This document shows, piece by piece, positions 14,174 through 59,006 of a stretch of DNA of 64,000 bases. Made by a program: the position numbers and the translations under genes. A model generated the notes under the pieces. It was not told the origin of the DNA and ran no database searches. It saw only the letters and a program-made list of their open reading frames with translations. Numbering within the stretch: position 1 is the stretch's first letter; each line of letters starts with the position of its first letter. The stretch covers positions 248,001-312,000 of IMG/VR virus record IMGVR_UViG_3300012931_000759. One strand, 5' to 3'.

Positions 14174-17100
14174 ATGGTCAGGTTTAAAAGCTTCAACGAG
14201 GTCGTGCTCTCCATGTTGGAGAGACTGCGACTCACACAGCCGCAATTGGACGACAAGCCGAACTCGGTGGCTAGGGACGTATTTGTCGACCCCCCGGCTT
14301 TCGAGATCGGCGAAGTTTACGAGGCCATGCGCGCCATTGCGCGCCTTCAGTCGCTAGCCAACCTGACCGGAAACGACCTGACCAATTTCGGTGCGAATTT
14401 TGGCGCTAGTCGTAAGACAGGCACAAAGGCAAGCGGGCAGGTCGTTTTCACGTTCCGTAAGATTGACACGAATCTGACCATACCGGTCGGCACCGTAGTG
14501 ACCACCCGCAATGGCTTGAGTTTCGTCACGATCTCCAGTACTACCGTGCGGGTATCCGACTCCAACGCACTCCGGGCAACCGCAACCAGGTTGCGTGATG
14601 AGCTGGACACAGCTGGGATCACCGACCAGTACGCCATCGAAACGAGTGTTCAGGCCCAGAGTATTGGCTCGTCCGGCAACATAGCCACCTACTCGATCGT
14701 TTCCCATTCTGCATCCGGCGTCAACAGCGTTACGAACGTTGTGTCATTTACAGGCGGAACGGACGTGGAGACAGACGCAGCCTTCCGGTCACGTATCCTG
14801 GCTACATTTGCCGGGGCCAACACCGGGACATCCCTTGGATACAGGAGTCTGATTCTGGCCTTGGCAGATGCCATCGACGCGCTGGTAGTCGAGCCGGGCG
14901 ATCCCCTCATGGTCAGGGACGGGACAACCACAACGACCGACAGCAGTGGAAACACCATCGTGGCGCAGCCAGGAACGGGCGGAAAAGTCGACATCTACGT
15001 ACTGGGGGAGAACCTCCAGGCCGCCACGGACAGCTTTATTTATAAGGACAAGAGCGGCAAAAACGATCCTACCAGCCCCAACAACGACCATGTGCTCGGG
15101 CAATCGTCACTAACTCCGAACACCGCCCTTTCTCTCAACAGCAGGCGGCTGGGCGTGCTCTCCGAGGGCGAGGCGATCCCAACGCAACCTATCTCCTCGA
15201 TTACATCGGTCATCGGCAGCTCCTCCGGGCCCAATTTTGTCGAGCAGTACACCGACAGCTCGGATCAACTTGTGGGGAACTATAAGCTTGTCGGCGACAC
15301 CGGCGTGGCCCAAGGAAGCCCGTTTGGCCTCGATAAAATAGTGTGGACCTCGGATCGCATTAACATGTTGGCTGAGAGTCGCACAAAAGGCGCTTTCAAC
15401 AGCGTCGATGGCCTAGCATACACTGATGTGCTCGGCATATCGGGGATTACGCAGGATGTACGTGTGACAAACGAGAACTCGTCCGTGTCGAGCGACCGCT
15501 TCTATGTCACGGTAAAACACAAGCCTGTCCGTACCGTGAGTCGTATTTTCAACCTCACCACAGGCGAGCGGTACACGATATCCGACCAGAACCCGGACGG
15601 GCAAAGCAGCGCACTGAATGAGACGGGACGCATCAAGATCTCGGGACGAACCCTGCCAACCGCAAGCGACACACTCCAGGTAGACTATACGTGGGTGATG
15701 TCTTTTGCGCCAACTGTCGAGTTCGACACGCTGGATCCTAAGGATCCGACCAACAACGCTCAGGACTCGATCGACTGGGGCTTCCCGAACTACATCAGGG
15801 ACGAGTTGTCGTCGGCCAATCTCGACGCTTACGGCAAGCTGACGGTTGCCACGGCCTACCCGGTTGGGCGCCTGCTTGCGGTGAGCACTTTCCATCAGGA
15901 GACCCTGACGGTCGGGGGTACCTCCTCCAGGAAAACGATCACGACAATCAACACGGTTCTGAACATACATAGTATCAAGGACACTTCGAAAAGCGGGGCA
16001 GAAGTGTACAATACCCTCACAGCCGATGGCACCTTCTCCAACAGACTGATTGCGCTGCCAAGCGACTCGCTGGCTGCCCTCGGAGATCAAGTTGTTGTCG
16101 TGTATAGCACCACGGATCTGATGGACTCGTACCAGTCGGCTTCGGCCGTCGGAAAAACCATCACACTGTTCCCGTCCACATTGGTTGCCTCCGGCACCGC
16201 CGTCATGGTAGACTATGCGACCAGCCTGCTGAACATCCTACCACAGACGAACTTCACCTCGTTGCCAGTGGCTGGGGACGGCTACAACTCCTTCACGGGC
16301 ATTGATGGATACCAGCCTATGCTCGACACCTTCGCGGGAAGCGTGGTTGTCGACAACAAGCGCAGGACCCCGACGCACCTGAAGGTGACGGCCGCCGCCA
16401 TACCGACGCAGGGTACGTTAGAGTTCATCGGCATCACTATGAACAAGATCACCGGGATCTTTACGACTACAGCTGCCTCCACCGGCAGCGCCAACATTGT
16501 CGACCTAGCTCCCCTGATCAGGACCGCCGAGGGTCTTGGGCGTACGGCAACGATCCCCTCGAACATCGCAGTAGCCAGGCTTCTTTCACTGGAGGCGGTC
16601 TCGCTGGATATTACAGGGAATGTCAAATCGGTGAATACCACGTACGATCTCACAAACTACGCGTTGAAGACATCGCGTTGGGACCTGGCATACGCTACCC
16701 AGAACACCTCGCTCGGCAACGCGTCAATCCAATTGGCAGCCGTTGCCGCGAACACCAGCAGCCCGATCACAACCGGCAAACACTTGCGCGCCACTTTCTA
16801 CTACGCGAAGGGCAACGACTCCGAACGAATGTTCTTCTCCAAGAATGGCTCACAGATCACGGACAAGGTTTTCGCAAAGGTGGCGTCCATCGGACGCGTG
16901 TCCGGTTTCACGAACTCCGCCGGAGCGGTCAGCGGGCGGTTTACCGTCGACACCGCGACACAGCCGGAGCAGAACGTCGCCTACGCGGTCGACTACAGCT
17001 ACACGGCCCCGAAGAACAACGAGCGCATCACGGTGAATTACGAATACAATAAGCTCATCGGGGATGCTACTTTTGCCGTCGAGGAAGGGAGGCCGATCAC

Positions 17101-17428
17101 GGCCGATGTCTTGGTAAAAGTAGCCGAGGAAGTCAAGATCGACGTAACCGCAGAAATCATCGTGCTCCCGTCGTACGCAACCTCGTCCGACACGGTCAAA
17201 CAGGACGTGGCCGACAATATCTCGTCCAGTCTAAACGCCACGGCATTGAATACGACGCTGGATGTGTCCGATATTGTAGCCAACGCGTACAACGTAGCTG
17301 GCCTGGACAAGATCACAATCACGCGGTTCAACCAACAGGGACAATCCGGTACCGTCACAACTGTGGTTGCCGGGAAGAACCAATACCTGGCCGCCGGTAC
17401 GGTGACCATAACAGTCAAGACGCGCTGA
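14174..17428 (+). CDS. Baseplate J-like (gp6) wedge protein with large insertions
   Basis: RKTGTKASGQVVF, AQSIGSSGNIA, FTGGTDVETDAAFRSRI, PGTGGKVDIYVLG are baseplate-J hallmarks; 1084 aa; contains 2 DGY. Confidence 0.9.
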   Translation: MVRFKSFNEVVLSMLERLRLTQPQLDDKPNSVARDVFVDPPAFEIGEVYEAMRAIARLQSLANLTGNDLTNFGANFGASRKTGTKASGQVVFTFRKIDTNLTIPVGTVVTTRNGLSFVTISSTTVRVSDSNALRATATRLRDELDTAGITDQYAIETSVQAQSIGSSGNIATYSIVSHSASGVNSVTNVVSFTGGTDVETDAAFRSRILATFAGANTGTSLGYRSLILALADAIDALVVEPGDPLMVRDGTTTTTDSSGNTIVAQPGTGGKVDIYVLGENLQAATDSFIYKDKSGKNDPTSPNNDHVLGQSSLTPNTALSLNSRRLGVLSEGEAIPTQPISSITSVIGSSSGPNFVEQYTDSSDQLVGNYKLVGDTGVAQGSPFGLDKIVWTSDRINMLAESRTKGAFNSVDGLAYTDVLGISGITQDVRVTNENSSVSSDRFYVTVKHKPVRTVSRIFNLTTGERYTISDQNPDGQSSALNETGRIKISGRTLPTASDTLQVDYTWVMSFAPTVEFDTLDPKDPTNNAQDSIDWGFPNYIRDELSSANLDAYGKLTVATAYPVGRLLAVSTFHQETLTVGGTSSRKTITTINTVLNIHSIKDTSKSGAEVYNTLTADGTFSNRLIALPSDSLAALGDQVVVVYSTTDLMDSYQSASAVGKTITLFPSTLVASGTAVMVDYATSLLNILPQTNFTSLPVAGDGYNSFTGIDGYQPMLDTFAGSVVVDNKRRTPTHLKVTAAAIPTQGTLEFIGITMNKITGIFTTTAASTGSANIVDLAPLIRTAEGLGRTATIPSNIAVARLLSLEAVSLDITGNVKSVNTTYDLTNYALKTSRWDLAYATQNTSLGNASIQLAAVAANTSSPITTGKHLRATFYYAKGNDSERMFFSKNGSQITDKVFAKVASIGRVSGFTNSAGAVSGRFTVDTATQPEQNVAYAVDYSYTAPKNNERITVNYEYNKLIGDATFAVEEGRPITADVLVKVAEEVKIDVTAEIIVLPSYATSSDTVKQDVADNISSSLNATALNTTLDVSDIVANAYNVAGLDKITITRFNQQGQSGTVTTVVAGKNQYLAAGTVTITVKTR

Positions 17429-17438
17429 GGACCATAAG

Positions 17439-20400
17439 ATGACAAACCTGCGAGCCAAACAGCTGATGGTGAGGAGCAGCACGACAATCGAGGTGACCTT
17501 CACGGCCAGCCTCGATCCTAACATCGCTCCGTCGAACATCACCATCGATGGGGTTGGTGGCACACCGTCCGATCTCGCGGTAAAGTCGGTCTCCGTGTCC
17601 GGAGCGAAGCTGACCGTTACGGTCAAGCCGATGATCTCCGGGGCTCTGTACGAGATGGTCCTGGCCTCGACGTCCACCCAGTTCTTTGTTGGCGCGCACG
17701 GGGAAAGGCTTGTCGAGGACGGCGCCACGAACCATCTGTTCTTCACAGGCATCGAGGAAGAGAGCGATGTCTTCCAGGCACTCAGGGATTCGCTGCCGCC
17801 CATCTACGATCCCAAGGGTGGCTCCCTGCTGCGCGACCTGATCATGCCGATCGCGCGGGAGATCGAGGCGGCACAGCACGCAGCGAACGAGATTGGAGCC
17901 GCCAACTACATCTCCGTAGAGGTGACGGACGAAGGGATCACAAGGGGTTCCGGGCCATACGACCGGTTCGCAAACGAAGGTGTCTTCAAAATCCTCAGGG
18001 TGGGCGCAACTGCTACCAGCGTCGGCACCAGCAAAACAATTACGTATACTTCGTTCCCGTCTGATCCTATTAGCCTCCAGCAAGATGTCGTGGCGGAAGA
18101 GACAGTATCGAACGCGTCCGGAAGTTTAAACAGTTTCGATGGTTTGTTGATCTCTCTGTCTAATGGACCTGTCATCAATGTGTCCTCTATCGTTCTGGTG
18201 CGAGGAACCTCACAGTATGTCTACGATATTACACTGTTCCGCTACGGCCTGGAGGAAAGTAAATACGACAGCGCGAATGCCTACTCAGCTTTCGACATAA
18301 AGAATAATCAGGTGCGCTTAAGCACTGCGGCTGTCGGCCCGAGTTTTCCTCTTCCCCAAGGAAACGATATCATCAAGATCGGGTACACATACAAGAGACT
18401 TGGCCGCATTCCGAGTGTGTCCTCTGTGTCTATCACGACAACCGTCAACGTGGTCAGGGAAAGTGTTCCTGCAGTTGCGACATCCTTTTTTCTTGGACAC
18501 GCTCCAATTGTGAACAGGACAGGGGATACTGTCACTACGGGCGGTATTCAATGGATCAACCCGGCCGCCAATTTCGATCCCACCCTGAAGCACCCGGCAT
18601 TCGTGACCGAAATACCTTTCAGCGAGTCCAGCCTACCCTCTAAGGCGGGAGAGTTTGCCGTCAACTACTCGACCGGGCAGGTGATTGTGTTTGGGGTGGA
18701 TGGTTCAGGAACCGACGGAACAACCGTTGTGCCGCCAGTCGCGACCTACTGGTTCAAGCGAACTTTCCAAGACGGCCTGGATTATAACCTCTTTAGCGAC
18801 CTGTGGGAAATAGCGGCTGTGCCAGGACGCGACCTGGAAGGATCCCCGGCTACAATTTCCTTCACCTATGAAGAAACCTTTGCCGAGGGTACCGATTTCC
18901 TGTTCGCCTCGCATGTCGAGCAGATCGACGAGCGCGTCAATAACAGGCTGATCGGGGATTTTGGGCTGACAACTGAGTACGGTCCTGTGAACGAGGTGTT
19001 CCGTATTTTCAACGAGACGACCGGCGAGTTGTATCGCGTGTCCCGAATCTCCGGAAACCAAGTGTTTTTCCAGGCTACAACTCCCCCGAGACTGGTCCAG
19101 ATGGCGCGGGAGGCGGCATCATTCAACGAGCATATCCAGGCGCAGATCGTGGTTTCCGAGGAAGTGGCGATTCCCTCGAAGTCCTTCGTGGCCTTTAGGG
19201 TCGAATTACAGGATGCGAACATCGCCACAGCGACTGCCGATTATATAGGTGCCAGCTTTAACTCTTCGCTGCTGTTTTCCGACACCTCCACATTCGCGCG
19301 GGAAATGTACTTCGACCCAGAGGACACCGAGGGCAACAACCTCCAACGCCTACAACAGGTCGGGGACTACATGGTTAACTACGCCAACGGGGTCGCGCAT
19401 GTAGCAGTACTTTCCGGCAGCAGCACCGACATCGGCGACGCCTCGTACCGTTTCGGCGAGATCCTGACGGCGAACAAGCACATCACCGAAGTGTCGAACC
19501 TGTACCGCAGCGCGAGCGCCAAAGCGGAGAACGTCAAAATCTTCACAATCGGTGCCATCGTGGACGAGACGGTCGAGATCGTGGACCTGGAGCAGGTCGG
19601 CGAATCCTCCGTGGACGGCAACGCCATCCAGGTCTCCAGCGGAACTGTCGAGGTTTCGCAGGACGCCATGAGGGTGCGGCACATTTTCCAGGTGACCGAC
19701 CTGCGAACCGCCTCCGCGCCCGTGGACTTCGTGGCGGGGGCCGTGATCTCCTCGTCGCAACCCACTACGATCACGCTCGACCCAGACGGCGTGCCGGTGA
19801 CCGACTCCGGAGCAAACGGCGTCGGCCTCGAAGTCCAGACGGACGGTTTCAGGAAATACATAGAAGTCTCAAGACTTTCCAACATTGTGTCCGGTCCAAC
19901 GCAGCTTGCGACGCTGGTCGATAAGGTGGCCGACCCGGATTTCTTGGCCAGGGAATACTGGGTCATCGACATGGCGACCGGCCAGAACTACTTCGCGTTG
20001 GGGAACGACAGCTACATCGATGCCTCGGCCAACAGGATCTACCTGCCGAGCAACGTGCCTGACAGCGCCATCGGCACCTTGGTCGAGGCGCAGTACAGAG
20101 CGGCACTTCTGGACGGGGCTGCGGTCTTGGTCGACTATACCCCCGGCGACATCTTCATAGACTACACATATGTGGCCGACGAGATCCTGGTTAGCTACGA
20201 GTATGGCGACAACGTGCTGGATTGGAGCGTGTCCGATAACCTGTCGGCTGGACAGACGTACTATGTCAGCTACCGCTACGGCGCGCTGCGTGACGCGTTG
20301 CGTGACAATTTTGGCGTGCTCACTGGAATAGAAGAGCTGGCCACGGCCCCGCTTAGCCTAGAGCGCGAGTTGTACCGCGCTGGTCTTGCTGGGTCGCTCC

Positions 20401-23400
20401 AGTCCTTTTTGAAGGGGCCTACGATCCCCGCCATCCAAGCGTTGGTGAAAGCATTCACGGCCATCAACCCAACTATTGAGGAGTCCGTGTTTTTCGAATG
20501 GCTTGTCGGCCGCGACTACCTCAACCTACTGCCCATGACTCTCACTACGGCGCCGGACTCCTCCGAGGATGCGATGTTTGCCCCTGGCAAGTTCGGGTAT
20601 GGACTGTTACTCGACAGCGCGGGCCAGACGGCCAAGTTACCAGCCACCTCCAACATGCGTTTCGCCGACGGTACGTGGGAATGCCAGCTGACGCCCCTTT
20701 GGATGGGGGTTGACAATGACGCCGCGCTTACTTTGGATCTTCTGTTCGACGGCTATAGGATGCCGTCCAAGGTGTTCATTGGCGCGGGCGGATACAGCCC
20801 GGACGCCATCCCGTTCACCATCGACCGCTCGGACAGCAGGGTGCTGGGTCGGCCGCTAGCGCTACACAGCGAGAACGGATATTTTATCTGGTACGACAGC
20901 ACGGCTAAGAAATGGCGGCTGCGGACTAGGGGGCCGATCGACGAGCAACGGCTTTTTGAGGGTCAAATCACGTCCTCGGGTCAGTTTGGAGAGGTAACGG
21001 TAGCTTCCTCGGCGGACGGATACCTACCAGCCGACGGCTACGGTCTGGACGAGACCAACGACTATGTGAGATCCACCGACGACCTGCTGGAATTCTCGTT
21101 CTCGGTGGACGGGTACGATCTACTGAACCTCCCCCTGGACGCCTATGGCGACGGCTATTACGCGGCTTTTGACGGTGTGGATTTCCAATCGGACAATGTG
21201 CGCTACCTGTTCGACACCGGCGTCGAGTCGGCCAGGAACAGGATGTCGCTCTACAAGGATGGCCGTGGTTTTCTCAGATACCGTGTCTACGACTCGAATG
21301 GCCGCATGAAGATGCTTAGCGCGAACATCCGCGACTGGGAAGCCGGAGCAACACATCCTGTGGCGGTCGCCTGGAAACTCGGTACCGTGGAGCAGCGGGA
21401 CGAGATGCACCTGTTCGTGGATGGCCGCGAGGTGCCGAACACCTACAGATTCACCGGATACTTGCCGGTTCCCGCGACAGGCGGCGTGAAGTACATGGAC
21501 TCGGTTGGCGAGACTCTTGTATCCGGCGTCCCGGTCCCCACCGTGGGCGGCAGCGACATGATCACGGTTATCGGCTCGGATACCGTTTACTCCGCCAGCG
21601 CGACCTTCGGATCGGACGGAGTCGGGATCGGGGATCCCTTCGTTATCCTGGACTCCACGACGGATGGCGCCAACACCCGAATGTCCCCCTACGTTTTCGT
21701 CGCGGAGATTGTCGACGAAAACAGGCTGCGTCTGGAGATAGGTCCGGCCGGATCTGGTATCCCGTACCTCATGATATCCAGCTTGACCGGTGTCAGGTAT
21801 TCCATCAACCGGTTAACGCTCGCCACGGTGGCCGATCCCCTCATAGAGAAAGTCCGCGTCTATACAGTTTCACCAACCGGCGAGGCGATGGAACTCAGAT
21901 CCCCGAACGCGCTCAATCCCGACTACTCGTTCGATCGCGACGGATACCAGGACTATATCCTGCTTGACAATGGCCTTCCCATCGGTTGGGATATCGTGCT
22001 GTACTCCTACGGATTAACCCAGCAGAGAAGCAGGCAGTTCGCATATGTGTGGCCGTACAGGAGGACAAACCTCCTCAAGACTATCATGCCGCAGCCGACG
22101 GCCGTGTCTAAGATTAGGATTACGAACATCATCAGCAGGCGTGCAAACATCGAGGCGGGGGCCTTCGCGCTCGTGGCCACCATCGTCGGCGGCCACCCGG
22201 TCCAGATGCTTGCCTCCAACCTGCCGTTCTGCCAGCCCAGCGAGTCCATACACGGGCGTCGATTGGCTGCCACGATCATGGGCGACAACTTCGACTTCGG
22301 TGGCTTCAACCAGGTGACCATCACCGGCGACACTTTCGATGGGTACGGGGGCGAGACCCTCGCTTTTACGAATGTCGGCACGCTCGAGACAACCAGGTAT
22401 TTCCTATCAATCACGAGCGTCTCGGCCGCCTTTACACCGCTCGACCTGTCCAGGTCGGCTGGGACGATAGAGATCCGCGAGGCCCTGCCGCTCACGCAGC
22501 AAGAGAACGGCGGTGACTACGCCCAGGTGCGGCTGTCGACCCTGGATCAGTACGGTTTGGACGGCACCCTGTCGGTGGGCGCAAACACCTTCAGTGACGG
22601 ATATGCCAGATTCGGGGTCGAGGATATCAACCGGTTGATCTACATCGAGGGCGCTCCTCCGTCGTGGCCTTCGCACGTGTTCACGATCACCGACGTACAA
22701 CTCGACCCGTCCGGAACAGTCAAGGACTCCGACACGGTGGTCGTATCTGGGCAGATGCCACCGGTCGGCACATATACAGGTCTGCGCTGGTCGGAACGGA
22801 ATCTGTCCTTCGCCGACTCCGGATTCGCCAACGGCCTGATCACGCTGGAGATCGTCGGCAGCGGAGGCTTACCTTTCCTGCTGAGTAACTGCTGGTACCT
22901 GGTGGATTTCCCGAGCTATGCAATCATTCCGCTGGAAACTGTTCCGGAGACATTGTATGTGGGCTCCGACATGTTTGGGGCAAACCAGGCAGGAGCTGTT
23001 ATCGACGAAATGCACAGTCTGGCCGAAATGCTGACCGACACCGGTGCCGGTGAGGTGTTGCCAAGCTCCGGTAGGAGTGTCACCTCCGAGGCGGAAAGTG
23101 TGCGCGAACTGACGCCGATCACACAGTCGTTGGCATTGTTCCACTTCAACGGATGCCTGAAAAACCGGGCGAGCTTCTACTCCAGCTTCTCGCGTTCGTT
23201 CTTCCAGAGTTCCAACAGTGTCAACAGCCTGTTCGGGCAGTCGGGTGTCTTCAATGGCCAAGGCGCGCTCTCGATGGACAATGCCGGAATATTCTTCAAT
23301 AATGCCGGAACCATAGAGTTCTGGGTGAGCCCGATACTCGACACGTACAACGACCCGACCCGCAGGTACTATATCGACTTGAGCGCAGAGCAAACAGTAG

Positions 23401-24347
23401 TCGGAGACCCCATCTCGGCCCTCGTGGTTAGGATGCCGGTCAGGGCGCGATCGGTCGTTTCGGTAACGCTGCCGGATAGCGACACGAACTTCTTCACAGG
23501 AGGTTCACTGGGCGCGGATGGTGTGACTGTCAGGCTAGGGCAGAGGATTCCGGTACAGAGCCAGCCCACGGTCACATATATCCCGATCACCAGCCAAGGG
23601 GATCGCTTCAGCGTCTTTAAGGATGACAACGGGATGCTGGTCCTGTCCGTTACGGCCTCCGGAGTCGACTACCAGATCTCTGCGCCTGTCTACTGGAAAA
23701 AGAACACCTGGCATCGCGTGTGGATCGGATGGAGCCTGAACAACCCAGACAACCAGGACCGCCTGGTGCTTATGGTGGATGGGGCCGAGCGTGGCGTCAT
23801 CAGGTACGGAACCGGCCTCAGATACGGCCTAGCCGGACGGTACGGTATGCCGACCGTCTGGGGACAAGCTCGCGCGGGAACGATTGCCTCGAGGAACATC
23901 CTGGCGGACATCAACATGACGGACTTCTTCAGCACCGTACAGATCGGTAACGACTTCTCCGGCCAGTCGCCCGCCATGGCTAGGATGGACAACCTGCGGT
24001 TCTCTAGCCAGATGAGGTCGATCCTCTACCTAGGCGGACGCGGGCCCGGCCAACTGATAGGGAACGACCTCCTGTACACAAGCAACGTGAACACGGCCCA
24101 GCCCGTGATCGAGGACGCATTGACTACGTTGCTTCTGGATTTCGACACGGATAGCAGCCTGGTCGAGTACCTTATTGCGGTACACGACAGCGCTGCAGGC
24201 ATTTTCGATTTCTTCGTTACCGTCATCGACTCATTCAAACTGATCCCGAACCAGGACGTCAGGGACCTGATTAAGAAGCTGATCAACAGGTTGAAGCCGG
24301 CGCACACCAGAGCGTTTGTGGACTTCGGGGACACGGAAGATTGTTAA
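17439..24347 (+). CDS. Giant baseplate wedge protein (gp7/P2 gpI-like) with N-terminal Ig-like and two LamG-like domains
   Basis: 2302 aa. C-terminal LINRLKPAHT motif of wedge proteins; LKGPTIPAIQALV wedge core; LamG-like strands GTIEFWVSP, WHRVWIGW, LMVDG, MDNLRFS. Contains 8 DGY. Confidence 0.75.
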   Translation: MTNLRAKQLMVRSSTTIEVTFTASLDPNIAPSNITIDGVGGTPSDLAVKSVSVSGAKLTVTVKPMISGALYEMVLASTSTQFFVGAHGERLVEDGATNHLFFTGIEEESDVFQALRDSLPPIYDPKGGSLLRDLIMPIAREIEAAQHAANEIGAANYISVEVTDEGITRGSGPYDRFANEGVFKILRVGATATSVGTSKTITYTSFPSDPISLQQDVVAEETVSNASGSLNSFDGLLISLSNGPVINVSSIVLVRGTSQYVYDITLFRYGLEESKYDSANAYSAFDIKNNQVRLSTAAVGPSFPLPQGNDIIKIGYTYKRLGRIPSVSSVSITTTVNVVRESVPAVATSFFLGHAPIVNRTGDTVTTGGIQWINPAANFDPTLKHPAFVTEIPFSESSLPSKAGEFAVNYSTGQVIVFGVDGSGTDGTTVVPPVATYWFKRTFQDGLDYNLFSDLWEIAAVPGRDLEGSPATISFTYEETFAEGTDFLFASHVEQIDERVNNRLIGDFGLTTEYGPVNEVFRIFNETTGELYRVSRISGNQVFFQATTPPRLVQMAREAASFNEHIQAQIVVSEEVAIPSKSFVAFRVELQDANIATATADYIGASFNSSLLFSDTSTFAREMYFDPEDTEGNNLQRLQQVGDYMVNYANGVAHVAVLSGSSTDIGDASYRFGEILTANKHITEVSNLYRSASAKAENVKIFTIGAIVDETVEIVDLEQVGESSVDGNAIQVSSGTVEVSQDAMRVRHIFQVTDLRTASAPVDFVAGAVISSSQPTTITLDPDGVPVTDSGANGVGLEVQTDGFRKYIEVSRLSNIVSGPTQLATLVDKVADPDFLAREYWVIDMATGQNYFALGNDSYIDASANRIYLPSNVPDSAIGTLVEAQYRAALLDGAAVLVDYTPGDIFIDYTYVADEILVSYEYGDNVLDWSVSDNLSAGQTYYVSYRYGALRDALRDNFGVLTGIEELATAPLSLERELYRAGLAGSLQSFLKGPTIPAIQALVKAFTAINPTIEESVFFEWLVGRDYLNLLPMTLTTAPDSSEDAMFAPGKFGYGLLLDSAGQTAKLPATSNMRFADGTWECQLTPLWMGVDNDAALTLDLLFDGYRMPSKVFIGAGGYSPDAIPFTIDRSDSRVLGRPLALHSENGYFIWYDSTAKKWRLRTRGPIDEQRLFEGQITSSGQFGEVTVASSADGYLPADGYGLDETNDYVRSTDDLLEFSFSVDGYDLLNLPLDAYGDGYYAAFDGVDFQSDNVRYLFDTGVESARNRMSLYKDGRGFLRYRVYDSNGRMKMLSANIRDWEAGATHPVAVAWKLGTVEQRDEMHLFVDGREVPNTYRFTGYLPVPATGGVKYMDSVGETLVSGVPVPTVGGSDMITVIGSDTVYSASATFGSDGVGIGDPFVILDSTTDGANTRMSPYVFVAEIVDENRLRLEIGPAGSGIPYLMISSLTGVRYSINRLTLATVADPLIEKVRVYTVSPTGEAMELRSPNALNPDYSFDRDGYQDYILLDNGLPIGWDIVLYSYGLTQQRSRQFAYVWPYRRTNLLKTIMPQPTAVSKIRITNIISRRANIEAGAFALVATIVGGHPVQMLASNLPFCQPSESIHGRRLAATIMGDNFDFGGFNQVTITGDTFDGYGGETLAFTNVGTLETTRYFLSITSVSAAFTPLDLSRSAGTIEIREALPLTQQENGGDYAQVRLSTLDQYGLDGTLSVGANTFSDGYARFGVEDINRLIYIEGAPPSWPSHVFTITDVQLDPSGTVKDSDTVVVSGQMPPVGTYTGLRWSERNLSFADSGFANGLITLEIVGSGGLPFLLSNCWYLVDFPSYAIIPLETVPETLYVGSDMFGANQAGAVIDEMHSLAEMLTDTGAGEVLPSSGRSVTSEAESVRELTPITQSLALFHFNGCLKNRASFYSSFSRSFFQSSNSVNSLFGQSGVFNGQGALSMDNAGIFFNNAGTIEFWVSPILDTYNDPTRRYYIDLSAEQTVVGDPISALVVRMPVRARSVVSVTLPDSDTNFFTGGSLGADGVTVRLGQRIPVQSQPTVTYIPITSQGDRFSVFKDDNGMLVLSVTASGVDYQISAPVYWKKNTWHRVWIGWSLNNPDNQDRLVLMVDGAERGVIRYGTGLRYGLAGRYGMPTVWGQARAGTIASRNILADINMTDFFSTVQIGNDFSGQSPAMARMDNLRFSSQMRSILYLGGRGPGQLIGNDLLYTSNVNTAQPVIEDALTTLLLDFDTDSSLVEYLIAVHDSAAGIFDFFVTVIDSFKLIPNQDVRDLIKKLINRLKPAHTRAFVDFGDTEDC

Positions 24348-24673
24348 TGGAACTTATAGAACTATTGGCGTGTATGTTTTACATGGGCTCGAAACCAATG
24401 ATGTGGCGATACGCTCTCCAGAGAAACAGACACGACTGTCATACACACGAAATATCCCGATGTCTCGCCACTTTAAAAGTGTTTTGTGGGCAACGGCACA
24501 ATTGGTCGACAATGTAGTTTTTCTGTACCAATTGTTTTACGAACCGAGAAGTTGAGTGTTTTTAAAGATCTGAATCATCTTTTTTGATATTTTTTTCGCA
24601 ACCTGTGCGACGCAGAAACCCAAATGGCAAAGATGTTTCTAAAATCTATTTGCCTAGGGGCTTCCTTGACTAA
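24347..24673 (+). pseudogene. Decayed CxxC zinc-repeat (endonuclease-associated) gene
   Basis: ATG overlaps the upstream stop (TAATG). The single frame reads ..ACMFYMGSKPMMWR..FCGQR..*FFCTNCFTNREVECF*..PVRRRNPNGKDVSKIY..*, resembling the repeats of 2177-2914 and 62145-62726. In-frame stops at 24515, 24563 and 24671; AT-rich. Confidence 0.5.
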
Positions 24674-24745
24674 GATGTTAAAATCCATCGGACTGCCTCC
24701 TTTGAAGTGTCTGGCTTACCGGTGGAAAATCGATGGAGGGCTGTC

Positions 24746-27574
24746 ATGAGTACAACACGTCTGCCTGTGGATTTAAAAAGGGTGGCATATTACGACGGGC
24801 AGCAGCTCACGCGCGATGACCTGCGCGACGAGCAGAACCGGCACGTCGGCATCGACGCGGCCACGGTCGCTAACTTCCTCGGAAGCGGGGTAGTGAGCGA
24901 CTCGGCAATTCCGCAGGTCCTTCTGGACACGGCGGAACTGAATCCCCAGCAGCAGGCGTTGCTCGACGCTTACTCGTTCGATGGGCAGAATGTCTACATC
25001 GGAACCGGACTGAAGCAGGTGTCGGATCCCGTGAATGGCGTGCTGCTAGCAGTCACGCTAACTGGCGTGGATCTCGTCGGCTCGATGGCGACCAAGGTAG
25101 CCATTATTGGCGAAACTTTCGGCGGGGGCCTTGTACACGACGAGCTTGTGTTCGAGGAGAATGGCACACAAGTTACGCGGGGGCGGTACAAAGAGGTGTT
25201 TGGCATCCTCCTCAATGACTTCGCAGGCAATCTATTCGGAAGTCTCTCCCCGGCAACCATCTATGTCGGCGGATATCAACTCGTGGGACGCTGTGTCGTC
25301 AGAGAGGCGGAGGCCTTGGAGGTCTCCATGGACACCCTGATAGCTTCGCAAACGGCTCAACCCAACCAGTTCTTCGGGAATTTCAAGCTCGGCAGCCCGT
25401 CATACACGCTGACTTCGTTATTCCAGGAGATCATTGGACCCTCGCATTCGCCCTCCGACCTTGGCATTAGTATTGCCTCGGTCGCCCAGCGGCAGATCGA
25501 CCCGGACGACGTGACAACCAGGATAGGGCAGAAGTTCCTGGCCACAGGGACGAACATCCAAAAGATCTCGATACTCGCGTCAGTGCTAAGGGACGAAAGC
25601 ACCCTGCCGGGAAACGAATACAATTGGTCGGGCCAGATCGTACTCAATCTCCTGGCGCTCCAGACGACAGTCGATTGTCCGGTGAAGCCGGTGCCCGATA
25701 ACCTCGAGGATTTCGATCCGGATCCCACAGTGGTAGCCCAGCTGTCGCTGGATGCGACGGATCTCGTGCGGCAAGGTGTCGTGCTGGATGGTTACGCTAG
25801 AAAAATCGATTTCGTGCTGACAGAGACCTCGATCGCCGATCCGCTGATTTCCCCCATTGAGCAGGGGCGTCACTATGTGTTCACCATCGGGCGCGCAGGC
25901 AATGCCAACGTCGGCACCCTGCTGTTCGAGGAAGCGGTCCACTCCACCCTGAATGGCTACATGGTAATCTACGACGGTACCCAATGGGTCAACATCTATG
26001 AGAGCGACATGTGGTTCGAGGTCTACGGCGATTATGTGAAGATCGCCGACGGCATCGCCTATCAGGAGGGCGTCGGTGTGGAGATCCCACGCTTGGCAGA
26101 GGATGCCAGCGGCGTCGAGTCCCCGAACTACGTGGGCCTGGTTCCATTCGCAACCACTGCCAAGGACGCCAAGAACTTCGTCCTCATGGAGGTGGAGACA
26201 ACCTACAGCGACACGCAGCAGGATCCACGAACGGGCAATCCGGTGTCCTCCAGGCTAGCGCCCTCCGCAGCCGTATCCATGGTTAAAGAGACGGATTTCC
26301 AGACGCAGCTTGCGGCGGACTTGGTGCCGCTCGCGCTGGCGCGTGCCACGGACGAGAACCCGAGGGGAAATCCCGTGTCCATATTGGGCACAACTACATT
26401 GGCTGGTGCTGTGTATGGCAACCACATACATGTTATCGCGCCGAACGCCGATCTGCTGTCGAACAACATCGTTGGCTCCATGTTGCTGCCGGACTCTGCC
26501 GAGAACAAGGAGTACCGCATTGTCTCTGTGTTGCTTAGCATGGACGCCTACGGCGATGTGGACGGTGACGGCGAGATCACATTCGCCGACCTTGCCATCG
26601 TGAACACTTGGCTACCCGACGGCTACGACCTCTCGGACCCCGTAGACCAGCAAAAGCTGATCGACGGCAAAGTCCCCCTGGACCGCGTCCTGCGGGCCGA
26701 CGTAAACGGGGACGGGAAAGTGGATATCACTGACGCGACGCTCATCCAGGCCTTCCTGGACAAGAGCATTTCGACGTTCCCGGCCGGTTCCTCTTTCCAG
26801 CGTATACTTATCAGGGTGGAGAACAAGTTGAATCCGCTGGCGGCCCAGGCCGACATGGCGGCGGACAACCCAGATTTCACCACTGTTCCGTTCGTCTCGA
26901 TTCCGTGGACGGTTGGCTACTTTAGGACATGGCTGCCTGACCGGATTGACCTGTGTGACATGCGTCGGTTGGTGCCGACCACGTTCACCGCTTTGCCAGA
27001 TGGCGATACCTGCTACGGTGGCCGGAACGACTTCTTTATTCCCGGTAACCAGCTATTGGACGGCTATGTTATGGACAAGTTCGGCGACCCGCATCGGCTC
27101 GACTTCGAGGTTGCCCATCTGTCCCTGAGGATCCCTGTGACCGACACGCTGGGTAACCCTACAATCCTCGACGGCTATGTGGGATTCCTACTATTCGACT
27201 CCTTCGTGGCCGAATCCTCGCTCGGCAAAACTTCGGCAGGTTTCCAGGCCATGAAGTACAGTGACCGGAGTTTCGTCCAGATCGGCGATTTCGGGGCCGG
27301 GCGTGTGCGCATCACAGCCTCACTACAGTCGCTAGCGAACGCCTGGCCGTCCCCGTTTGGTGGGAATGTGGACGACCTGGTCGGAATGTACTACGACCCA
27401 ACCACTTCGCTCCTGGTGCTACAAACCAGGAACCTGCTGAACGACGGCTATGGCAACCTACTGCCGTCCCAATGTATGCGGATCCTGGTAACTGTCTACC
27501 TGAAGAAGGCAGGATTCGCGAATACGACGCAAGATGTGACGGATGGCCAGATGCGCACCCTGTTGGGTATTTGA
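24746..27574 (+). CDS. Tail fibre / baseplate-attached protein with a dockerin-like domain
   Basis: Start moved to ATG 24746 (SD GGAGG). N-terminal RVAYYDGQQLTRDDLRDEQ is typical of baseplate-attached fibre proteins of contractile systems. Paired GDVDGDGEITFADL / ADVNGDGKVDITDA repeats. Contains 5 DGY. Confidence 0.7.
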   Translation: MSTTRLPVDLKRVAYYDGQQLTRDDLRDEQNRHVGIDAATVANFLGSGVVSDSAIPQVLLDTAELNPQQQALLDAYSFDGQNVYIGTGLKQVSDPVNGVLLAVTLTGVDLVGSMATKVAIIGETFGGGLVHDELVFEENGTQVTRGRYKEVFGILLNDFAGNLFGSLSPATIYVGGYQLVGRCVVREAEALEVSMDTLIASQTAQPNQFFGNFKLGSPSYTLTSLFQEIIGPSHSPSDLGISIASVAQRQIDPDDVTTRIGQKFLATGTNIQKISILASVLRDESTLPGNEYNWSGQIVLNLLALQTTVDCPVKPVPDNLEDFDPDPTVVAQLSLDATDLVRQGVVLDGYARKIDFVLTETSIADPLISPIEQGRHYVFTIGRAGNANVGTLLFEEAVHSTLNGYMVIYDGTQWVNIYESDMWFEVYGDYVKIADGIAYQEGVGVEIPRLAEDASGVESPNYVGLVPFATTAKDAKNFVLMEVETTYSDTQQDPRTGNPVSSRLAPSAAVSMVKETDFQTQLAADLVPLALARATDENPRGNPVSILGTTTLAGAVYGNHIHVIAPNADLLSNNIVGSMLLPDSAENKEYRIVSVLLSMDAYGDVDGDGEITFADLAIVNTWLPDGYDLSDPVDQQKLIDGKVPLDRVLRADVNGDGKVDITDATLIQAFLDKSISTFPAGSSFQRILIRVENKLNPLAAQADMAADNPDFTTVPFVSIPWTVGYFRTWLPDRIDLCDMRRLVPTTFTALPDGDTCYGGRNDFFIPGNQLLDGYVMDKFGDPHRLDFEVAHLSLRIPVTDTLGNPTILDGYVGFLLFDSFVAESSLGKTSAGFQAMKYSDRSFVQIGDFGAGRVRITASLQSLANAWPSPFGGNVDDLVGMYYDPTTSLLVLQTRNLLNDGYGNLLPSQCMRILVTVYLKKAGFANTTQDVTDGQMRTLLGI

Positions 27575-27590
27575 GATGGAGGAATGAGTC

Positions 27591-28388
27591 ATGGCAACCG
27601 CTAACATCATCATCAACCAGACGGGCAGGCCGCCGGGCCTGCCAGACCAAAGCCGCGACGATCTGGCACTCAGCGTCCCGGTGATCCTGACCAACGAGAA
27701 CAACTCAGGAGTAGTGGCCTGGAACTGGCGGCTGCTATCCAAGCCAGCCGGGTCGGGCACCGGCCTGGACACGCCAACTCTGTCATCCTGCCAATTTACG
27801 CCCGACCTGGCGGGGTCGTACCTGGTTCAGCTGGTCGTGAACGGTCAGACTCGGGCGACGGCGATCGCCGCCGTGAAGACGACATTCCTCGGACTGCGCA
27901 TTCCGGCGAAGGGGGAGACCACCGAGCTGGGCGGCTGGGAGGCCGCCTTCCAAGAGTTGTTCCGACAACTGGAGGACGGCATCCAGTCGGGCGGTGGTAC
28001 CAGTGACCGGACGTTGCTGTTTTCGGACGACACTCAGTTCACTGAGGTGGGCGACACGTTCATCACGAAGAAAACCTTCAGGGTTGTGCGCGACCCGGAC
28101 AAACCACCAACACAGTGGCGGATTCTGGTGTCACTGTGGGGATCGTCGTCGTACGGCCTTGTTGAGTGTCGAGTGAACGCGATCGGAGAAGGTGGTACTG
28201 ACACGGTTACGCTACCTTCCGTCTTCGGAAATGCCGAGATCGTGGTGGCTGCAAACCTCACCATTAGTAATGCCAACGAACCTGTAGGGTCGATCGTGAC
28301 AATCGAGATCCAGTTAAGGCTGGTCTCAGGGGGCGGGGCGGCCAGCCTCCAGTACACCGACGTGTTTGCTCTCTACGCGGCGGCCTGA
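27591..28388 (+). CDS. Virion protein with PKD/K319L-like Ig domain
   Basis: SD GGAGG; WNWRLLSKPAGS..FTPDLAGSYLVQLVVNG is a PKD-like signature. Confidence 0.65.
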   Translation: MATANIIINQTGRPPGLPDQSRDDLALSVPVILTNENNSGVVAWNWRLLSKPAGSGTGLDTPTLSSCQFTPDLAGSYLVQLVVNGQTRATAIAAVKTTFLGLRIPAKGETTELGGWEAAFQELFRQLEDGIQSGGGTSDRTLLFSDDTQFTEVGDTFITKKTFRVVRDPDKPPTQWRILVSLWGSSSYGLVECRVNAIGEGGTDTVTLPSVFGNAEIVVAANLTISNANEPVGSIVTIEIQLRLVSGGGAASLQYTDVFALYAAA

Positions 28389-42624: not shown

Positions 42625-43709
42625 ACGTTCCGTTCCTGAACCTGGACCGCGAGGCCCAGATGCTCATCGGCCTCGGCCTAATGGCCGACATCGAGGAGGT
42701 CATCCGGTCCGGGCGGTTCCTGTTCGGTCCGAAAGCCGCCGAACTCGAGATCCGGCTGTCCGAGATGTTCGGGCGGGAGGTAGTGCTGGTGGGCAGTGGC
42801 ACGGACGCCTTGGCCCTTTCCCTGAAGGCTGTCGGCGTGGGTCCGGGCGATCTGGTGGCCGTGCCGGCTATCTCCGCCATCCCCACGGCTGTCGCCATTC
42901 ATATGGTCGGGGCCGAGCCGCTCTACATCGACGTGGATGGCGGATTCACCATGGATCCGCGCAAGCTGGAGAAGATGGCGAACCACCCGCGCCTGAAAGC
43001 CGTCGTTCCGGTCCACCTGTACGGGAATCCCGCCGACATCGGCAGGATCCGTGTAATCTGCTGTGCCAACCGCCTGATCCTGGTCGAAGATTGCGCCCAG
43101 AGCCTTGGGGCCTACAGCCATGATCTGCCCTTGGGGACGCTGGGTTCGGCCGGAGCGTTGAGTTTCTACCCGACCAAGAACCTCGGCTGCATGGGTGACG
43201 GCGGCGCGGTGGTCGCGTGCGACGCCAACATGGCCAAGGCGATCCGGGAGCTGCGCTTCTACGGCCAGGAGACGAGCCACAAAATGGGGCGCTTCATCGG
43301 CATGAACAGCCGCATGGATGAGATCCAGTGCGCCATCCTGCTGAGGAAGCTCCAGCTTCTGCTGGCCCAGTTCGGCCGCAGGCGGGAGATGAAGGTAATG
43401 TACGACGCCGCCATGGCTGAGACCCGGTTCTGGACACCGGCATGGCGCGAGGGGGCGATGCCCCACCTGTACCCGATCATGGCCGAGGATCGCGCGAAAA
43501 CGATCGCGGCCTTGGCCGAGAGGGGCGTCGGGACGGCGATCCACTACCCGTTCCACCTGATGGAGGCCGTGGAGGGGGCGCCCGGCGCGGGCGAGCTTTC
43601 GCAGGCCAAGATGTACGTGGGCAAGGTGATCTCGCTGCCATTCAACCCATGGATGACGGACGACGAGATAAAGCATGTCCTACAGTCGGTCAAGGAGGTG
43701 GGGGAGTGA
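42621..43709 (+). CDS. DegT/DnrJ/EryC1/StrS PLP sugar aminotransferase (FdtB/QdtB-like)
   Basis: GSGTDAL, PVHLYGNPAD, EDCAQSLG, SFYPTKNLGCMGDGG (catalytic Lys), NSRMDEIQ. Confidence 0.92.
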   Translation: MNVPFLNLDREAQMLIGLGLMADIEEVIRSGRFLFGPKAAELEIRLSEMFGREVVLVGSGTDALALSLKAVGVGPGDLVAVPAISAIPTAVAIHMVGAEPLYIDVDGGFTMDPRKLEKMANHPRLKAVVPVHLYGNPADIGRIRVICCANRLILVEDCAQSLGAYSHDLPLGTLGSAGALSFYPTKNLGCMGDGGAVVACDANMAKAIRELRFYGQETSHKMGRFIGMNSRMDEIQCAILLRKLQLLLAQFGRRREMKVMYDAAMAETRFWTPAWREGAMPHLYPIMAEDRAKTIAALAERGVGTAIHYPFHLMEAVEGAPGAGELSQAKMYVGKVISLPFNPWMTDDEIKHVLQSVKEVGE

Positions 43710-52343: not shown

Positions 52344-52395
52344 AGAAATATCCGCGTGCGCGAGCACTGTCAAGCGGAAAATGGAGAATACCAAG

Positions 52396-58623: not shown

Positions 58624-58911
58624 ATGCCGATATATGACTACATTTGCGAGGAATGCGGCCACGTCTTCGAGGAGTTTGCGCGTATCACGGATCCTCCGAT
58701 TAATAAATGTCCGGCCTGCGGCCTAACGGGACGCGTATGTCGCCTAATCTCGAGCGGCACAGTTGGCACAGTAGAGATGAACGGTCGGGAGTACTTCAAT
58801 CGTGTCTTAGAACCGGAGGCCAAGCGGATCGCCGAGAAGATTAAGCACGGGGATGATGCCGCAATCGCTGATGTTTTTGGCGAGGGCCCTCCTGCAAAAA
58901 AAGTCGGTTGA
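58624..58911 (+). CDS. FmdB-family zinc-ribbon protein
   Basis: MPIYDYICEECGHVFE..CPACG..RLIS. Confidence 0.9.
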   Translation: MPIYDYICEECGHVFEEFARITDPPINKCPACGLTGRVCRLISSGTVGTVEMNGREYFNRVLEPEAKRIAEKIKHGDDAAIADVFGEGPPAKKVG

Positions 58912-58936
58912 ATTCCGGCTGCCCTGTGCGTATAAT
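58908..58936 (+). promoter_or_regulatory. sigma70/sigmaA-type promoter for the prkA operon
   Basis: TTGAAT (58908-58913), 17-nt spacer, TATAAT (58931-58936), about 70 nt upstream of ATG 59007. Confidence 0.65.
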
Positions 58937-59006
58937 CTCTTTAAACAGGGGAAGGATTGCGTCCCGCTCCGGCCAAAGGCCGGGAAAAACCGCGAAAGGA
59001 TGGAGC

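What the first reader, a model, noticed from the sequence alone, without database searches (positions are those of the whole stretch)
26549..26761. Dockerin-like domain inside a tail fibre protein
Seen in sequence: YGDVDGDGEITFADLAIV ... RADVNGDGKVDITDATLIQAFL, two Ca-binding loop-helix repeats with an extended linker that itself contains a DGY. Established: this is the type I dockerin pattern, which binds cohesins on surfaces of cellulosome-bearing and other anaerobes. Inference: the virion may dock on host cohesin modules, or recruit a phage-encoded cohesin-bearing accessory protein or enzyme, making a modular plug-in tail.
Basis: partly seen in the sequence, partly recalled or inferred. Interest (0 to 1): 0.7.

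Follow-up and report, generated by a model that had tools for sequence, protein, structure and literature searches.

The report
Dockerin module in huge-phage baseplate protein
A real calcium-binding dockerin module sits inside a baseplate protein conserved across a large group of uncultivated giant phages, but these phages encode no recognisable cohesin partner, so the module's partner, if any, is unknown.

Summary
Window 26549-26761 (+) encodes the quoted peptide inside a 942-aa protein (24746-27574). It passes Pfam Dockerin_1 (34.7 bits against a cut-off of 22.9). In a confident AlphaFold2 model it superposes on more than 12 solved type-I dockerins (Z 8-11, rmsd 1.3-2.4 A, 25-36% identity).

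The window lies in a 340-kb phage record from a wetland metagenome. The protein follows a Baseplate_J wedge protein and a 2,302-aa giant protein. It carries a CBM-like sandwich resembling the phage 812 tripod protein, so it looks like a peripheral baseplate protein rather than a fibre.

The module is ancestral. About 115 representative relatives, on contigs up to 473 kb, keep it. The Ca ligands are invariant, while the classical cohesin-contact positions are variable. The linker between the loops is longer than canonical, and 15 of 72 relatives carry a roughly 100-aa insertion there.

The "plug-in" reading is not supported for phage-encoded cohesins. There is no Cohesin match at E<=1 in this genome or in five 97-100% complete relatives. 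The downstream swappable gene is a PKD / coiled-coil / TNF-like lectin, not a cohesin. Binding to a host cohesin cannot be tested because the host is unknown. My best reading is an exposed, Ca2+-dependent structural or contact module.

The parts
14174..17428 (+). Baseplate_J-like wedge protein (1,084 aa). Context: it places the locus in a contractile-tail baseplate module.
   Evidence: Pfam Baseplate_J 99 bits. PHROG 6 baseplate wedge subunit, E 9.5e-46. The nearest cultured match is Bacillus phage G gp188 at 28% identity.
17439..24347 (+). Giant 2,302-aa protein, always encoded directly upstream of the dockerin protein. Inferred to be an arm-scaffold-like baseplate protein and a candidate attachment partner.
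   Evidence: An orthologue of 2,160-3,218 aa lies directly upstream in nearly all of the 83 related loci. Laminin_G_3 matches in 16 of 20 orthologues and Big_5 in 7 of 20; no Cohesin at E<=1. No PDB sequence match. The analogy to the phage 812 arm scaffold gp117 comes from PMC13433997 and is an inference.
24746..27574 (+). Dockerin-bearing 942-aa peripheral baseplate protein (the mechanical ORF starts at GTG 24707).
   Evidence: ORF. Full-length family of 83 clusters at 90% identity, typically 942 aa. AF2 model pLDDT 84, pTM 0.74.
25331..26035 (+). CBM/lectin-like beta-sandwich domain (protein residues 196-430).
   Evidence: VIA-align: phage 812 baseplate chain 9euj_G Z 14.4, Douge gp20 Z 13.3, Bxb1 tail tip Z 12.0, Cwp84 lectin-like domain Z 11.6.
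26540..26791 (+). Complete dockerin module (protein residues 599-682), flanked by strands 590-601 and 683-692.
   Evidence: Pfam Dockerin_1. Superposition on solved dockerins. Secondary structure.
26555..26590 (+). Ca-binding loop 1 (DVDGDGEITFAD), followed by helix 1 (26582-26605).
   Evidence: Positions 1, 5 and 12 and Gly6 are 99-100% conserved in 71 relatives. D1 and D12 are present in 72 of 72 proteins of the extended set.
26606..26698 (+). Extended linker with two short helices. It has conserved Gln and Asp-Gly, and is the site of indels and of a ~100-aa insertion in some relatives.
   Evidence: Helices at 632-639 and 645-651. Q635 is 92% and G641 99% conserved. The D12-to-D1 spacing is 34-52 aa in most relatives and 124-162 aa in 15 of 72.
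26699..26734 (+). Ca-binding loop 2 (DVNGDGKVDITD), followed by helix 3 (26726-26758).
   Evidence: D1, G6 and D12 are invariant and D5 is 93% conserved (the rest Asn) in 71 relatives. Confirmed in the extended set.
27591..28388 (+). Downstream 265-aa receptor-binding-type protein: PKD-like anchor (1-95), long helix (112-134) and TNF-like lectin head (140-261). Lineage-specific and modular.
   Evidence: AF2 pLDDT 94. PKD 2yrl Z 9.2; Pgp3, PLTL, BC2L-C and Bdellovibrio fibre tips Z 9.5-10.7; no cohesin among the listed best matches (50 rows each). Only the N-terminal ~120 aa are shared with 181-735-aa proteins, which lie directly downstream of the dockerin gene in 11 related loci.

Best explanation
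The segment is a genuine, homologous type-I-like dockerin module: two loop-helix 'F-hand' repeats that each bind one Ca2+. It is inserted between two beta-strands in the distal half of a 942-aa peripheral baseplate protein. That protein is the last conserved tail gene of a large clade of uncultivated 300-470-kb phages.

Shown here: the domain identity, the predicted fold, the invariance of the Ca ligands, its antiquity in the family, and the absence of any sequence-recognisable cohesin in these phages.

Inferred mechanism: dockerins fold only when loaded with Ca2+ (established for cellulosomal dockerins). The module would therefore become rigid once the virion is outside the cell. It would clasp the loop it is inserted in, because its N- and C-termini lie next to each other. 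Its conserved linker side would pack on the protein body, leaving the variable helix-1/helix-3 face exposed to solvent at the baseplate periphery.

I think it most likely serves as a Ca2+-dependent structural or contact knob. The contact would be with another baseplate subunit, such as the giant scaffold-like protein or a neighbouring copy. I do not think it is one half of a canonical cohesin-dockerin plug. I put about 0.9 on identity and about 0.45-0.5 on this mechanism.
For: Domain identity:
- Pfam score above the cut-off.
- Superposition on more than 12 solved dockerins (Foldseek probability 1.0 to 4uyp_B and 8x39_A).
- Residues 603-685 alone match dockerins of Ruminococcus, Oscillospiraceae and Clostridia MAGs at 29-37% identity.

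Ancestral and constrained:
- 66 of 83 close clusters have a precomputed PF00404 hit.
- The loops are present in nearly all of about 80 IMG/VR loci, down to 27-30% identity.
- About 115 representatives of 50%-identity clusters reach E<=1e-30, and none of the distant full-length members inspected lacks a Ca loop.
- Ca ligands are invariant, whereas positions 10, 11, 17 and 18 have majority frequencies of 0.28-0.56 against a protein-wide mean of 0.65. The linker residues Q635 and G641 are 92-99% conserved.

Baseplate context.

No cohesin. There is exactly one dockerin per genome in five complete relatives.

No conserved adjacent partner: downstream genes are usually glycosyltransferases.

Tolerance of a ~100-aa insertion in the linker fits a peripheral, exposed module.
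Against: - No coordinates of the model could be inspected. Exposure of the helix face and packing of the linker are inferred from conservation only.
- Ca2+ binding and Ca-dependent folding are inferred from homology, not measured.
- The variable helix face is equally what one would expect for a host-recognition surface.
- The virion location of the protein rests on gene order and fold similarity, not on proteomics or cryo-EM.
- The only complex prediction I could run gave no answer.
- A highly divergent cohesin-like beta-sandwich in the giant protein would escape Pfam.
Confidence: 0.5

Rival explanations
1. Host docking. The exposed dockerin face binds a cohesin, or another surface protein, on the host cell and so contributes to adsorption. 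Variation at the contact positions would track host diversity.
For: The canonical contact positions 10, 11, 17 and 18 are the most variable part of an otherwise constrained module, and are mostly small or polar residues as in real dockerins. The carrier has a CBM-like domain typical of receptor-binding baseplate proteins. The sample is a wetland, where organisms with non-cellulosomal dockerin/cohesin proteins occur. Dockerins on viral contigs have been proposed to act in adhesion (PMC13452462).
Against: The module is kept over more than 100 deeply diverged phage lineages from many samples. That would require all their hosts to display a cohesin, yet cohesins are sporadic outside cellulosome producers (own knowledge, Peer et al. 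2009). The host is unknown, so nothing could be tested. The phage already has lectin-type candidates for receptor binding.
Confidence: 0.17
2. Modular plug-in inside the virion. The dockerin binds a phage-encoded beta-sandwich too divergent to be recognised as a cohesin. This could be a domain of the giant upstream protein or the PKD anchor of the swappable downstream receptor-binding protein, giving an exchangeable tail tip.
For: The downstream protein has a conserved N-terminal anchor domain and highly variable distal parts (181-735 aa; two tandem copies in L012), which is the hallmark of a swappable receptor-binding protein. The giant protein is always adjacent. In phage 812, tripod complexes dock on loops of a giant arm scaffold.
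Against: No Cohesin match at E<=1 in six genomes, five of them 97-100% complete, nor in 20 giant-protein orthologues. The anchor is a PKD fold and the head a TNF-like lectin, not a cohesin. The downstream gene is absent in L006 and L030 and in all lineages at 30-34% identity, which nevertheless keep the dockerin. The complex prediction scored 0.00, which counts as no answer and not as evidence.
Confidence: 0.2
3. Purely structural relic. The two Ca sites only stabilise an extracellular protein, as in many Ca-binding loops, and the helix face contacts nothing.
For: Only the Ca ligands and the hydrophobic core are conserved, while the surface drifts. Large insertions are tolerated. No partner was found.
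Against: Retaining the complete two-repeat dockerin architecture in every inspected member over deep divergence, together with conserved linker residues, suggests more than generic stabilisation. This reading overlaps with the best explanation and differs from it only in denying any contact.
Confidence: 0.13

Closest known systems
Type I dockerins of cellulosomal enzymes and scaffoldins (e.g. PDB 2ccl_B, 4fl4_G, 2mte Doc48S, 4uyp_B ScaB dockerin, 2vn6_B)
   Same: Both have the duplicated segment of a 12-residue Ca loop plus helix, with ligands at positions 1, 3, 5 and 12. The three-helix core superposes at 1.3-2.4 A with 25-36% identity. The module passes PF00404.
   Different: It is internal, at residues 599-682 of 942, and rigidly flanked by beta-strands rather than sitting at a terminus on a flexible linker. 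The linker is about 14 residues longer, with an extra helix: 70 residues align to 56 profile positions. There is no Lys-Arg pair at positions 17/18. It occurs in a phage baseplate protein, and no cohesin is present in the genome.
Non-cellulosomal dockerin-like modules of bacteria and archaea (Peer et al. 2009, FEMS Microbiol Lett 291:1, cited in PMC6487960; ANME dockerin proteins, PMC9012536, PMC13452462)
   Same: The dockerin occurs outside any cellulosome, often without an identifiable cohesin. Its presumed role is in surface adhesion or assembly, and its function is experimentally unknown.
   Different: Those are cellular surface or secreted proteins, or loosely 'viral contig' genes. Here the module is a fixed internal part of one orthologous virion-module protein across a whole phage clade.
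UniProt A0A6J5RS54 'Dockerin domain-containing protein [uncultured Caudovirales phage]' (BFVD)
   Same: It is a full-length structural homologue (Foldseek E 6e-75, TMq 0.65, 24% identity, 1,332 aa). The domain has therefore already been flagged by automatic annotation.
   Different: It carries only an automatic name. I found no paper that describes the family, its baseplate context or the lack of a cohesin.
Tripod protein gp119 of Staphylococcus phage 812 (and A511 homologues), T4 gp10-like peripheral baseplate proteins
   Same: It is a large multidomain peripheral baseplate protein with CBM-like beta-sandwiches, encoded after the wedge and giant arm-scaffold genes.
   Different: Similarity is limited to one domain (Z 14, 14-15% identity). 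No dockerin is reported in the tripod protein. Homology of the whole proteins is not shown.
Ca2+-activated baseplate of lactococcal phage p2 (Sciara et al. 2010; own knowledge, not checked here)
   Same: It is a precedent for Ca2+ acting as an extracellular cue that fixes the conformation of receptor-binding baseplate parts.
   Different: The protein folds and the Ca site are different. It is a siphovirus, and no dockerin is involved.

Membership tests
Dockerin type I (Pfam PF00404) | Sequence model score above the curated gathering threshold | tested here: met
   34.7 bits on the whole protein and 50.3 bits on the excerpt, against a cut-off of 22.9. 37 bits in the six-frame genome search.
Dockerin type I (Pfam PF00404) | Two tandem ~22-residue segments, each a 12-residue Ca loop with Asp/Asn at positions 1, 3 and 5 and Asp at 12, followed by a helix | tested here: met
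   The loops are DVDGDGEITFAD and DVNGDGKVDITD. Helices follow each loop. The ligands are invariant in 71 and in 72 relatives.
Dockerin type I (Pfam PF00404) | Three-dimensional dockerin fold (antiparallel helices 1 and 3 with the linker helix) | tested here: met
   Met on a predicted model only: Z 8.1-11.3, rmsd 1.3-2.4 A, covering 55-68 residues of 55-73-residue solved dockerins.
Dockerin type I (Pfam PF00404) | Binds two Ca2+ ions and needs them to fold | not testable with these tools
   Inferred from the conserved ligands. It needs ITC, DSF or a structure.
Cohesin-dockerin system | A cognate cohesin (PF00963) encoded by the same genome | tested here: not met
   No match at E<=1 in the own 340-kb record or in five 97-100% complete relatives. 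None in 20 giant-protein orthologues. The neighbour is not cohesin-like.
Cohesin-dockerin system | High-affinity Ca-dependent binding to a cohesin (of the host or of any organism) | not testable with these tools
   The host is unknown. No cellular genome carries a full-length relative that could point to one.
Phage tail fibre | Elongated trimeric fibrous architecture (coiled coil, beta-helix or triple beta-spiral shaft) | tested here: not met
   The monomer model is a compact chain of beta-sandwich domains with pTM 0.74 and no long fibrous segment. The best structural matches are baseplate or tail-tip globular domains. The oligomeric state was not tested.
Peripheral baseplate / receptor-binding module of contractile-tailed phages | Encoded in the baseplate gene block and sharing folds with solved baseplate proteins | tested here: met
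   The gene order Baseplate_J, then giant protein, then this protein is conserved in nearly all of the 83 related loci. The phage 812 tripod, Douge gp20 and Bxb1 tail tip match at Z 12-14. Presence in the virion itself was not tested.

The most novel reading that the evidence does not exclude
A whole clade of giant phages uses a dockerin as a true Ca2+-dependent docking device on the virion. It would either latch onto cohesin-fold proteins on host envelopes or snap baseplate parts together through a cohesin-like sandwich too divergent for sequence models. Either case would be the first cohesin-dockerin-type interaction working in a virus particle.
Probability: 0.15. Interest if true: 0.8.

Novelty: new variant of a known kind. 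Interest (0 to 1): 0.5.

Why it matters
Dockerins are the textbook plug of cellulosomes and a favourite part for synthetic biology. Here one is a fixed, deeply conserved internal domain of a baseplate protein in hundreds of uncultivated 300-470-kb phages that have no recognisable cohesin. This raises a concrete question about what dockerins do when no cohesin is around. It also marks a likely Ca2+-dependent element in the adsorption apparatus of an abundant, unstudied phage clade. If a partner exists, it would give a new orthogonal dockerin pair and a handle on host recognition. If none exists, it is a clear example of the dockerin fold used as a Ca2+ clasp. The domain is also the only Pfam-recognisable feature of this protein family, so it makes a convenient marker for the clade's tail module.

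Tried and rejected
- PHROGs gave no match for the dockerin protein, the giant protein or the two downstream ORFs.
- tblastn of the protein against 50,697 deposited phages gave no match.
- Bacillus phage G and the 485-kb uncultured phage LR745208, the nearest records by Baseplate_J, have no Dockerin_1 match. There is therefore no cultured model.
- I considered the downstream 265-aa protein as a cohesin-like partner and rejected it on fold and on distribution among relatives.
- I considered the giant protein as a carrier of a cohesin. It gave no signal in Pfam at E<=1 across 20 orthologues, nor in a PDB profile search.
- The complex prediction of residues 560-942 with the downstream protein scored ipSAE 0.00, which is 'no answer' and is not used as evidence.
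- Looking for a fusion of the downstream anchor domain onto the 1,516-aa variants found no similarity.
- For the host, the genome-contig scan found only unrelated dockerins of rumen Firmicutes and Bacteroidales. One relative is labelled as a Patescibacteria MAG, which I regard as a binning artefact. The host remains unknown.
- The ESM Atlas look-up gave only weak leads, with scores of 0.71 or less.
- Some short database proteins start exactly at loop 1 (P0206, P0211). I treat these as truncated or mis-called genes and did not interpret them.
- The metatranscriptome holds one identical 238-nt contig (25584-25821). This is compatible with transcription but is not proof.
- Seven literature searches found no description of a dockerin in a phage baseplate or tail protein. 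They found only passing mentions.
Full report
**Observation**

It lies in ORF 24707-27574 (955 aa from a GTG). The database form of the protein (P0001) and the family consensus start at the ATG at 24746, giving 942 aa. Protein residue numbers below use that 942-aa form.

- Pfam Dockerin_1 scores 34.7 bits (E 2e-8) on the whole protein and 50.3 bits (E 2.8e-13) on a 107-aa excerpt. The gathering cut-off is 22.9.
- EF-hand models also fire on the two loops, but all stay under their cut-offs.
- A six-frame search of the whole genome finds this one place only. A regular-expression scan finds no second dockerin-type double loop in the genome.
- The stretch is identical in contigs of two wetland metagenome runs from different studies, so it is not a one-off assembly error.

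**Fold**

An AlphaFold2 model built on 71 homologues is confident: mean pLDDT 84, pTM 0.74, and above 90 throughout the segment.

- Strand 590-601 leads into loop 1, helix 613-620, two short linker helices (632-639, 645-651), loop 2, helix 661-671 and then strand 683-692.
- VIA-align superposes residues 599-682 on a dozen solved dockerins, with Z 8.1-11.3, rmsd 1.3-2.4 A and 25-36% identity. The alignments cover almost the entire solved chains, for example 60 of 62 residues of 2ccl_B at 1.3 A.
- Foldseek gives probability 1.0 to 4uyp_B and 8x39_A.
The module is a dockerin of the type-I kind.

It differs from the canonical form in two ways. It is internal and rigidly flanked. Its inter-repeat linker is about 14 residues longer: 70 residues align to 56 profile positions, and there is an extra helix.

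**Context**

The window is part of a 340,392-bp IMG/VR virus record estimated at 84% complete. It has GC 55.7% and 15 tRNA genes, and comes from a wetland metagenome.

Upstream in the window lie:
- a tail-tube-initiator-like gene;
- a 1,585-aa protein with a weak match (E 1.8e-4) to a PHROG family named 'tail protein with lysin activity';
- a 1,084-aa Baseplate_J wedge protein;
- a 2,302-aa giant protein (17439-24347).

Residues 196-430 of the dockerin protein form a CBM/lectin-like beta-sandwich. It matches a chain of the phage 812 baseplate structure at Z 14.4; from its size and numbering I take this chain to be the tripod protein, but I did not check the chain assignment. It also matches the Douge central fibre gp20 (Z 13.3) and the Bxb1 tail tip (Z 12.0). 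In phage 812 the tripod trimers are peripheral receptor-binding complexes docked on a giant arm-scaffold protein (PMC13433997).

The gene order here is wedge, giant protein, this protein, which parallels that arrangement. I therefore call the carrier a peripheral baseplate, receptor-binding-type protein rather than a fibre. The model has no fibrous shaft. This assignment is an inference from gene order and fold. Virion presence was not tested.

**Family**

- The protein has 83 full-length relatives among 90%-identity clusters, mostly 935-960 aa, on contigs up to 460 kb. Of these, 66 carry a precomputed PF00404 hit.
- IMG/VR holds at least 128 relatives.
- An exhaustive profile search of 1.84 billion representatives finds 115 at E<=1e-30, with lengths up to 1,958 aa. 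Weaker hits are unrelated multi-dockerin proteins that match only profile positions ~600-678.
- No deposited phage and no cellular genome among 185,579 species has a full-length relative. In the cellular genomes only residues 603-685 match, to dockerins of Ruminococcus, Oscillospiraceae, Clostridia and Sodaliphilus MAGs at 29-37% identity. This independently supports homology with real dockerins.
- Synteny is conserved. Nearly all of the 83 related loci have the giant protein directly upstream, preceded by a ~1,080-1,100-aa protein in the position of the window's Baseplate_J gene in the two loci where neighbours were listed.

**Conservation pattern**

In the 71-sequence alignment, Ca-ligand positions 1, 5 and 12 and the Gly at position 6 of both loops are 93-100% conserved, and position 3 is Asn or Asp in 94-100%.

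In an extended set of 72 distinct proteins down to ~27% identity, D1 and D12 of loop 1 and D12 of loop 2 are present in 72 of 72, and D1 of loop 2 in 70 of 72.

The positions that contact cohesins in solved complexes are 10, 11, 17 and 18 of each repeat (established for type-I dockerins; own knowledge). Their majority frequencies are only 0.28-0.56, against a protein-wide mean of 0.65. The hydrophobic core positions and two linker residues (Q635 92%, G641 99%) are conserved.

I infer that the linker side packs on the protein body and that the two-helix face is exposed and free to vary.

The spacing between D12 of loop 1 and D1 of loop 2 is 36 residues here and 34 in most relatives. It reaches 52 in some, and is 124-162 in 15 of 72. 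In those 15 a beta-rich segment of ~100 aa is inserted in the linker. Every inspected family member retains at least one loop, and Dockerin_1 is the only Pfam family that the family matches.

**Testing the plug-in idea**

1. Phage-encoded cohesin. PF00963 gives no match at E<=1 in the own record. It also gives none in five related records that are 97-100% complete (432-473 kb), each of which has exactly one Dockerin_1 match in this same protein.

2. The giant neighbour. Twenty orthologues scanned one by one show Laminin_G_3 (16 of 20) and Big_5 (7 of 20) but no Cohesin at E<=1. A profile search finds no PDB sequence.

3. The downstream gene (27591-28388, 265 aa).
   - Its first ~120 residues are conserved (40% identity, E 2e-25) in proteins of 181-735 aa, encoded directly after the dockerin gene in 11 related loci. 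L012 has two tandem copies. The rest of the protein differs.
   - Its model (pLDDT 94) is a PKD-like sandwich, a long helix and a TNF-like jelly-roll head. The head resembles Pgp3, the PLTL and BC2L-C lectins, Bdellovibrio fibre tips and the lambda tail tip. No cohesin appears among the matches.
   - It is thus a small, probably trimeric, swappable receptor-binding protein, which is interesting in itself.
   - However, it is absent in L006 and L030 (56% and 52% identical dockerin proteins). It is also absent in all lineages at 30-34% identity, where glycosyltransferases or other genes follow directly. It cannot be the reason the dockerin is conserved.

4. A complex prediction of residues 560-942 with this protein scored 0.00.

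5. Host cohesins could not be examined because the host is unknown.

**Interpretation**

Shown: a true dockerin-fold module with intact, invariant Ca sites. It is ancestral in one orthologous baseplate-module protein of a large clade of huge phages, and there is no sequence-recognisable cohesin in these genomes.

Inferred:
- Dockerins need Ca2+ to fold (established for cellulosomal dockerins). The module would therefore rigidify outside the cell.
- Its termini are adjacent, so it can clasp the loop between strands 590-601 and 683-692.
- Its variable face is exposed at the baseplate periphery.

I rate the readings as follows:
- A Ca2+-dependent structural or contact knob within the baseplate: about 0.45-0.5.
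- A cryptic intra-virion plug-in: about 0.2.
- Host docking: about 0.17.
- A purely stabilising relic: about 0.13.

**Comparison and novelty**

The module meets the sequence, motif and predicted-fold criteria of type-I dockerins. It fails the system-level criterion of a cognate cohesin in the same genome. In that respect it resembles the non-cellulosomal dockerin-like modules of bacteria and archaea, whose function is also unknown.

UniProt already auto-names a distant homologue 'Dockerin domain-containing protein [uncultured Caudovirales phage]'. Papers mention dockerins on viral contigs only in passing. Seven literature searches found no description of this family, its baseplate context, its long or split linker, or the absence of cohesins.

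I class it as a new variant of a known kind, of moderate interest.

Noticed in passing
window 28366-51447: A ~23-kb glycosylation island starts right after the tail genes. It includes a 323-aa ORF with no Pfam match whose sequence contains a YVDSD (DxD-like) motif, read by eye. It also includes GT4 and GT2 glycosyltransferases of 756 and 1,149 aa, a methyltransferase, a DegT aminotransferase, epimerases/dehydratases, GDP-mannose 4,6-dehydratase and a nucleotidyltransferase. In relatives, glycosyltransferases also directly follow the dockerin protein. The phage may glycosylate its own virion or the host surface.
   Followed up: partly
window 43442-44422 and 45273-46481: Two LEM-3-like GIY-YIG endonuclease genes with HTH domains, likely homing endonucleases, interrupt the sugar-gene cluster. 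They coincide with a GC dip to 0.48-0.50 at 44-48 kb.
   Followed up: no
window 27591-28388; L012:10821-12746: The downstream gene is a modular receptor-binding protein: a PKD anchor, a coiled coil and a TNF-like lectin head. Its N-terminal ~120 aa are conserved and its distal parts are swapped (181-735 aa in relatives). L012 has two tandem copies.
   Followed up: yes
L060, L061, L064, L068-L070, L072, L074-L077, L080-L083 (family protein, between the two Ca loops): In 15 of 72 relatives a beta-rich segment of about 90-125 aa is inserted in the dockerin linker. The two F-hand repeats then lie 124-162 residues apart. This is a 'split' dockerin with a guest domain of unknown fold.
   Followed up: partly
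window 24348-24745: There is a ~400-nt gap between the giant gene and the dockerin gene, whereas most relatives have 3-50 nt (L011 also has 383). No promoter-like or terminator-like site was found.
   Followed up: partly
window 52300-53790, 53803-55341, 57202-58608, 58908-62144: The window also encodes a tubulin/FtsZ-family protein (PhuZ-like), a UvsW-like helicase, a DnaB-like helicase and a 1,078-aa PrkA-type AAA/kinase protein.
   Followed up: no
L082:11238-14846: In one lineage the gene after the dockerin protein is a 1,202-aa protein with ten Big_3_5 Ig-like repeats (E 3e-148). This is another lineage-specific distal tail or adhesin gene.
   Followed up: no
L077 (IMGVR_UViG_3300010403_000705, 432,844 bp): IMG/VR classes this 97%-complete relative as a provirus. 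If that is right, the original contig's flanks could reveal a host for the clade.
   Followed up: no
own genome G000:C1:55850-78217: A cluster of 14 tRNA genes lies outside the window, plus one more at 234 kb. Two are tRNA-His with anticodon ATG as called by ARAGORN, which is unusual.
   Followed up: no
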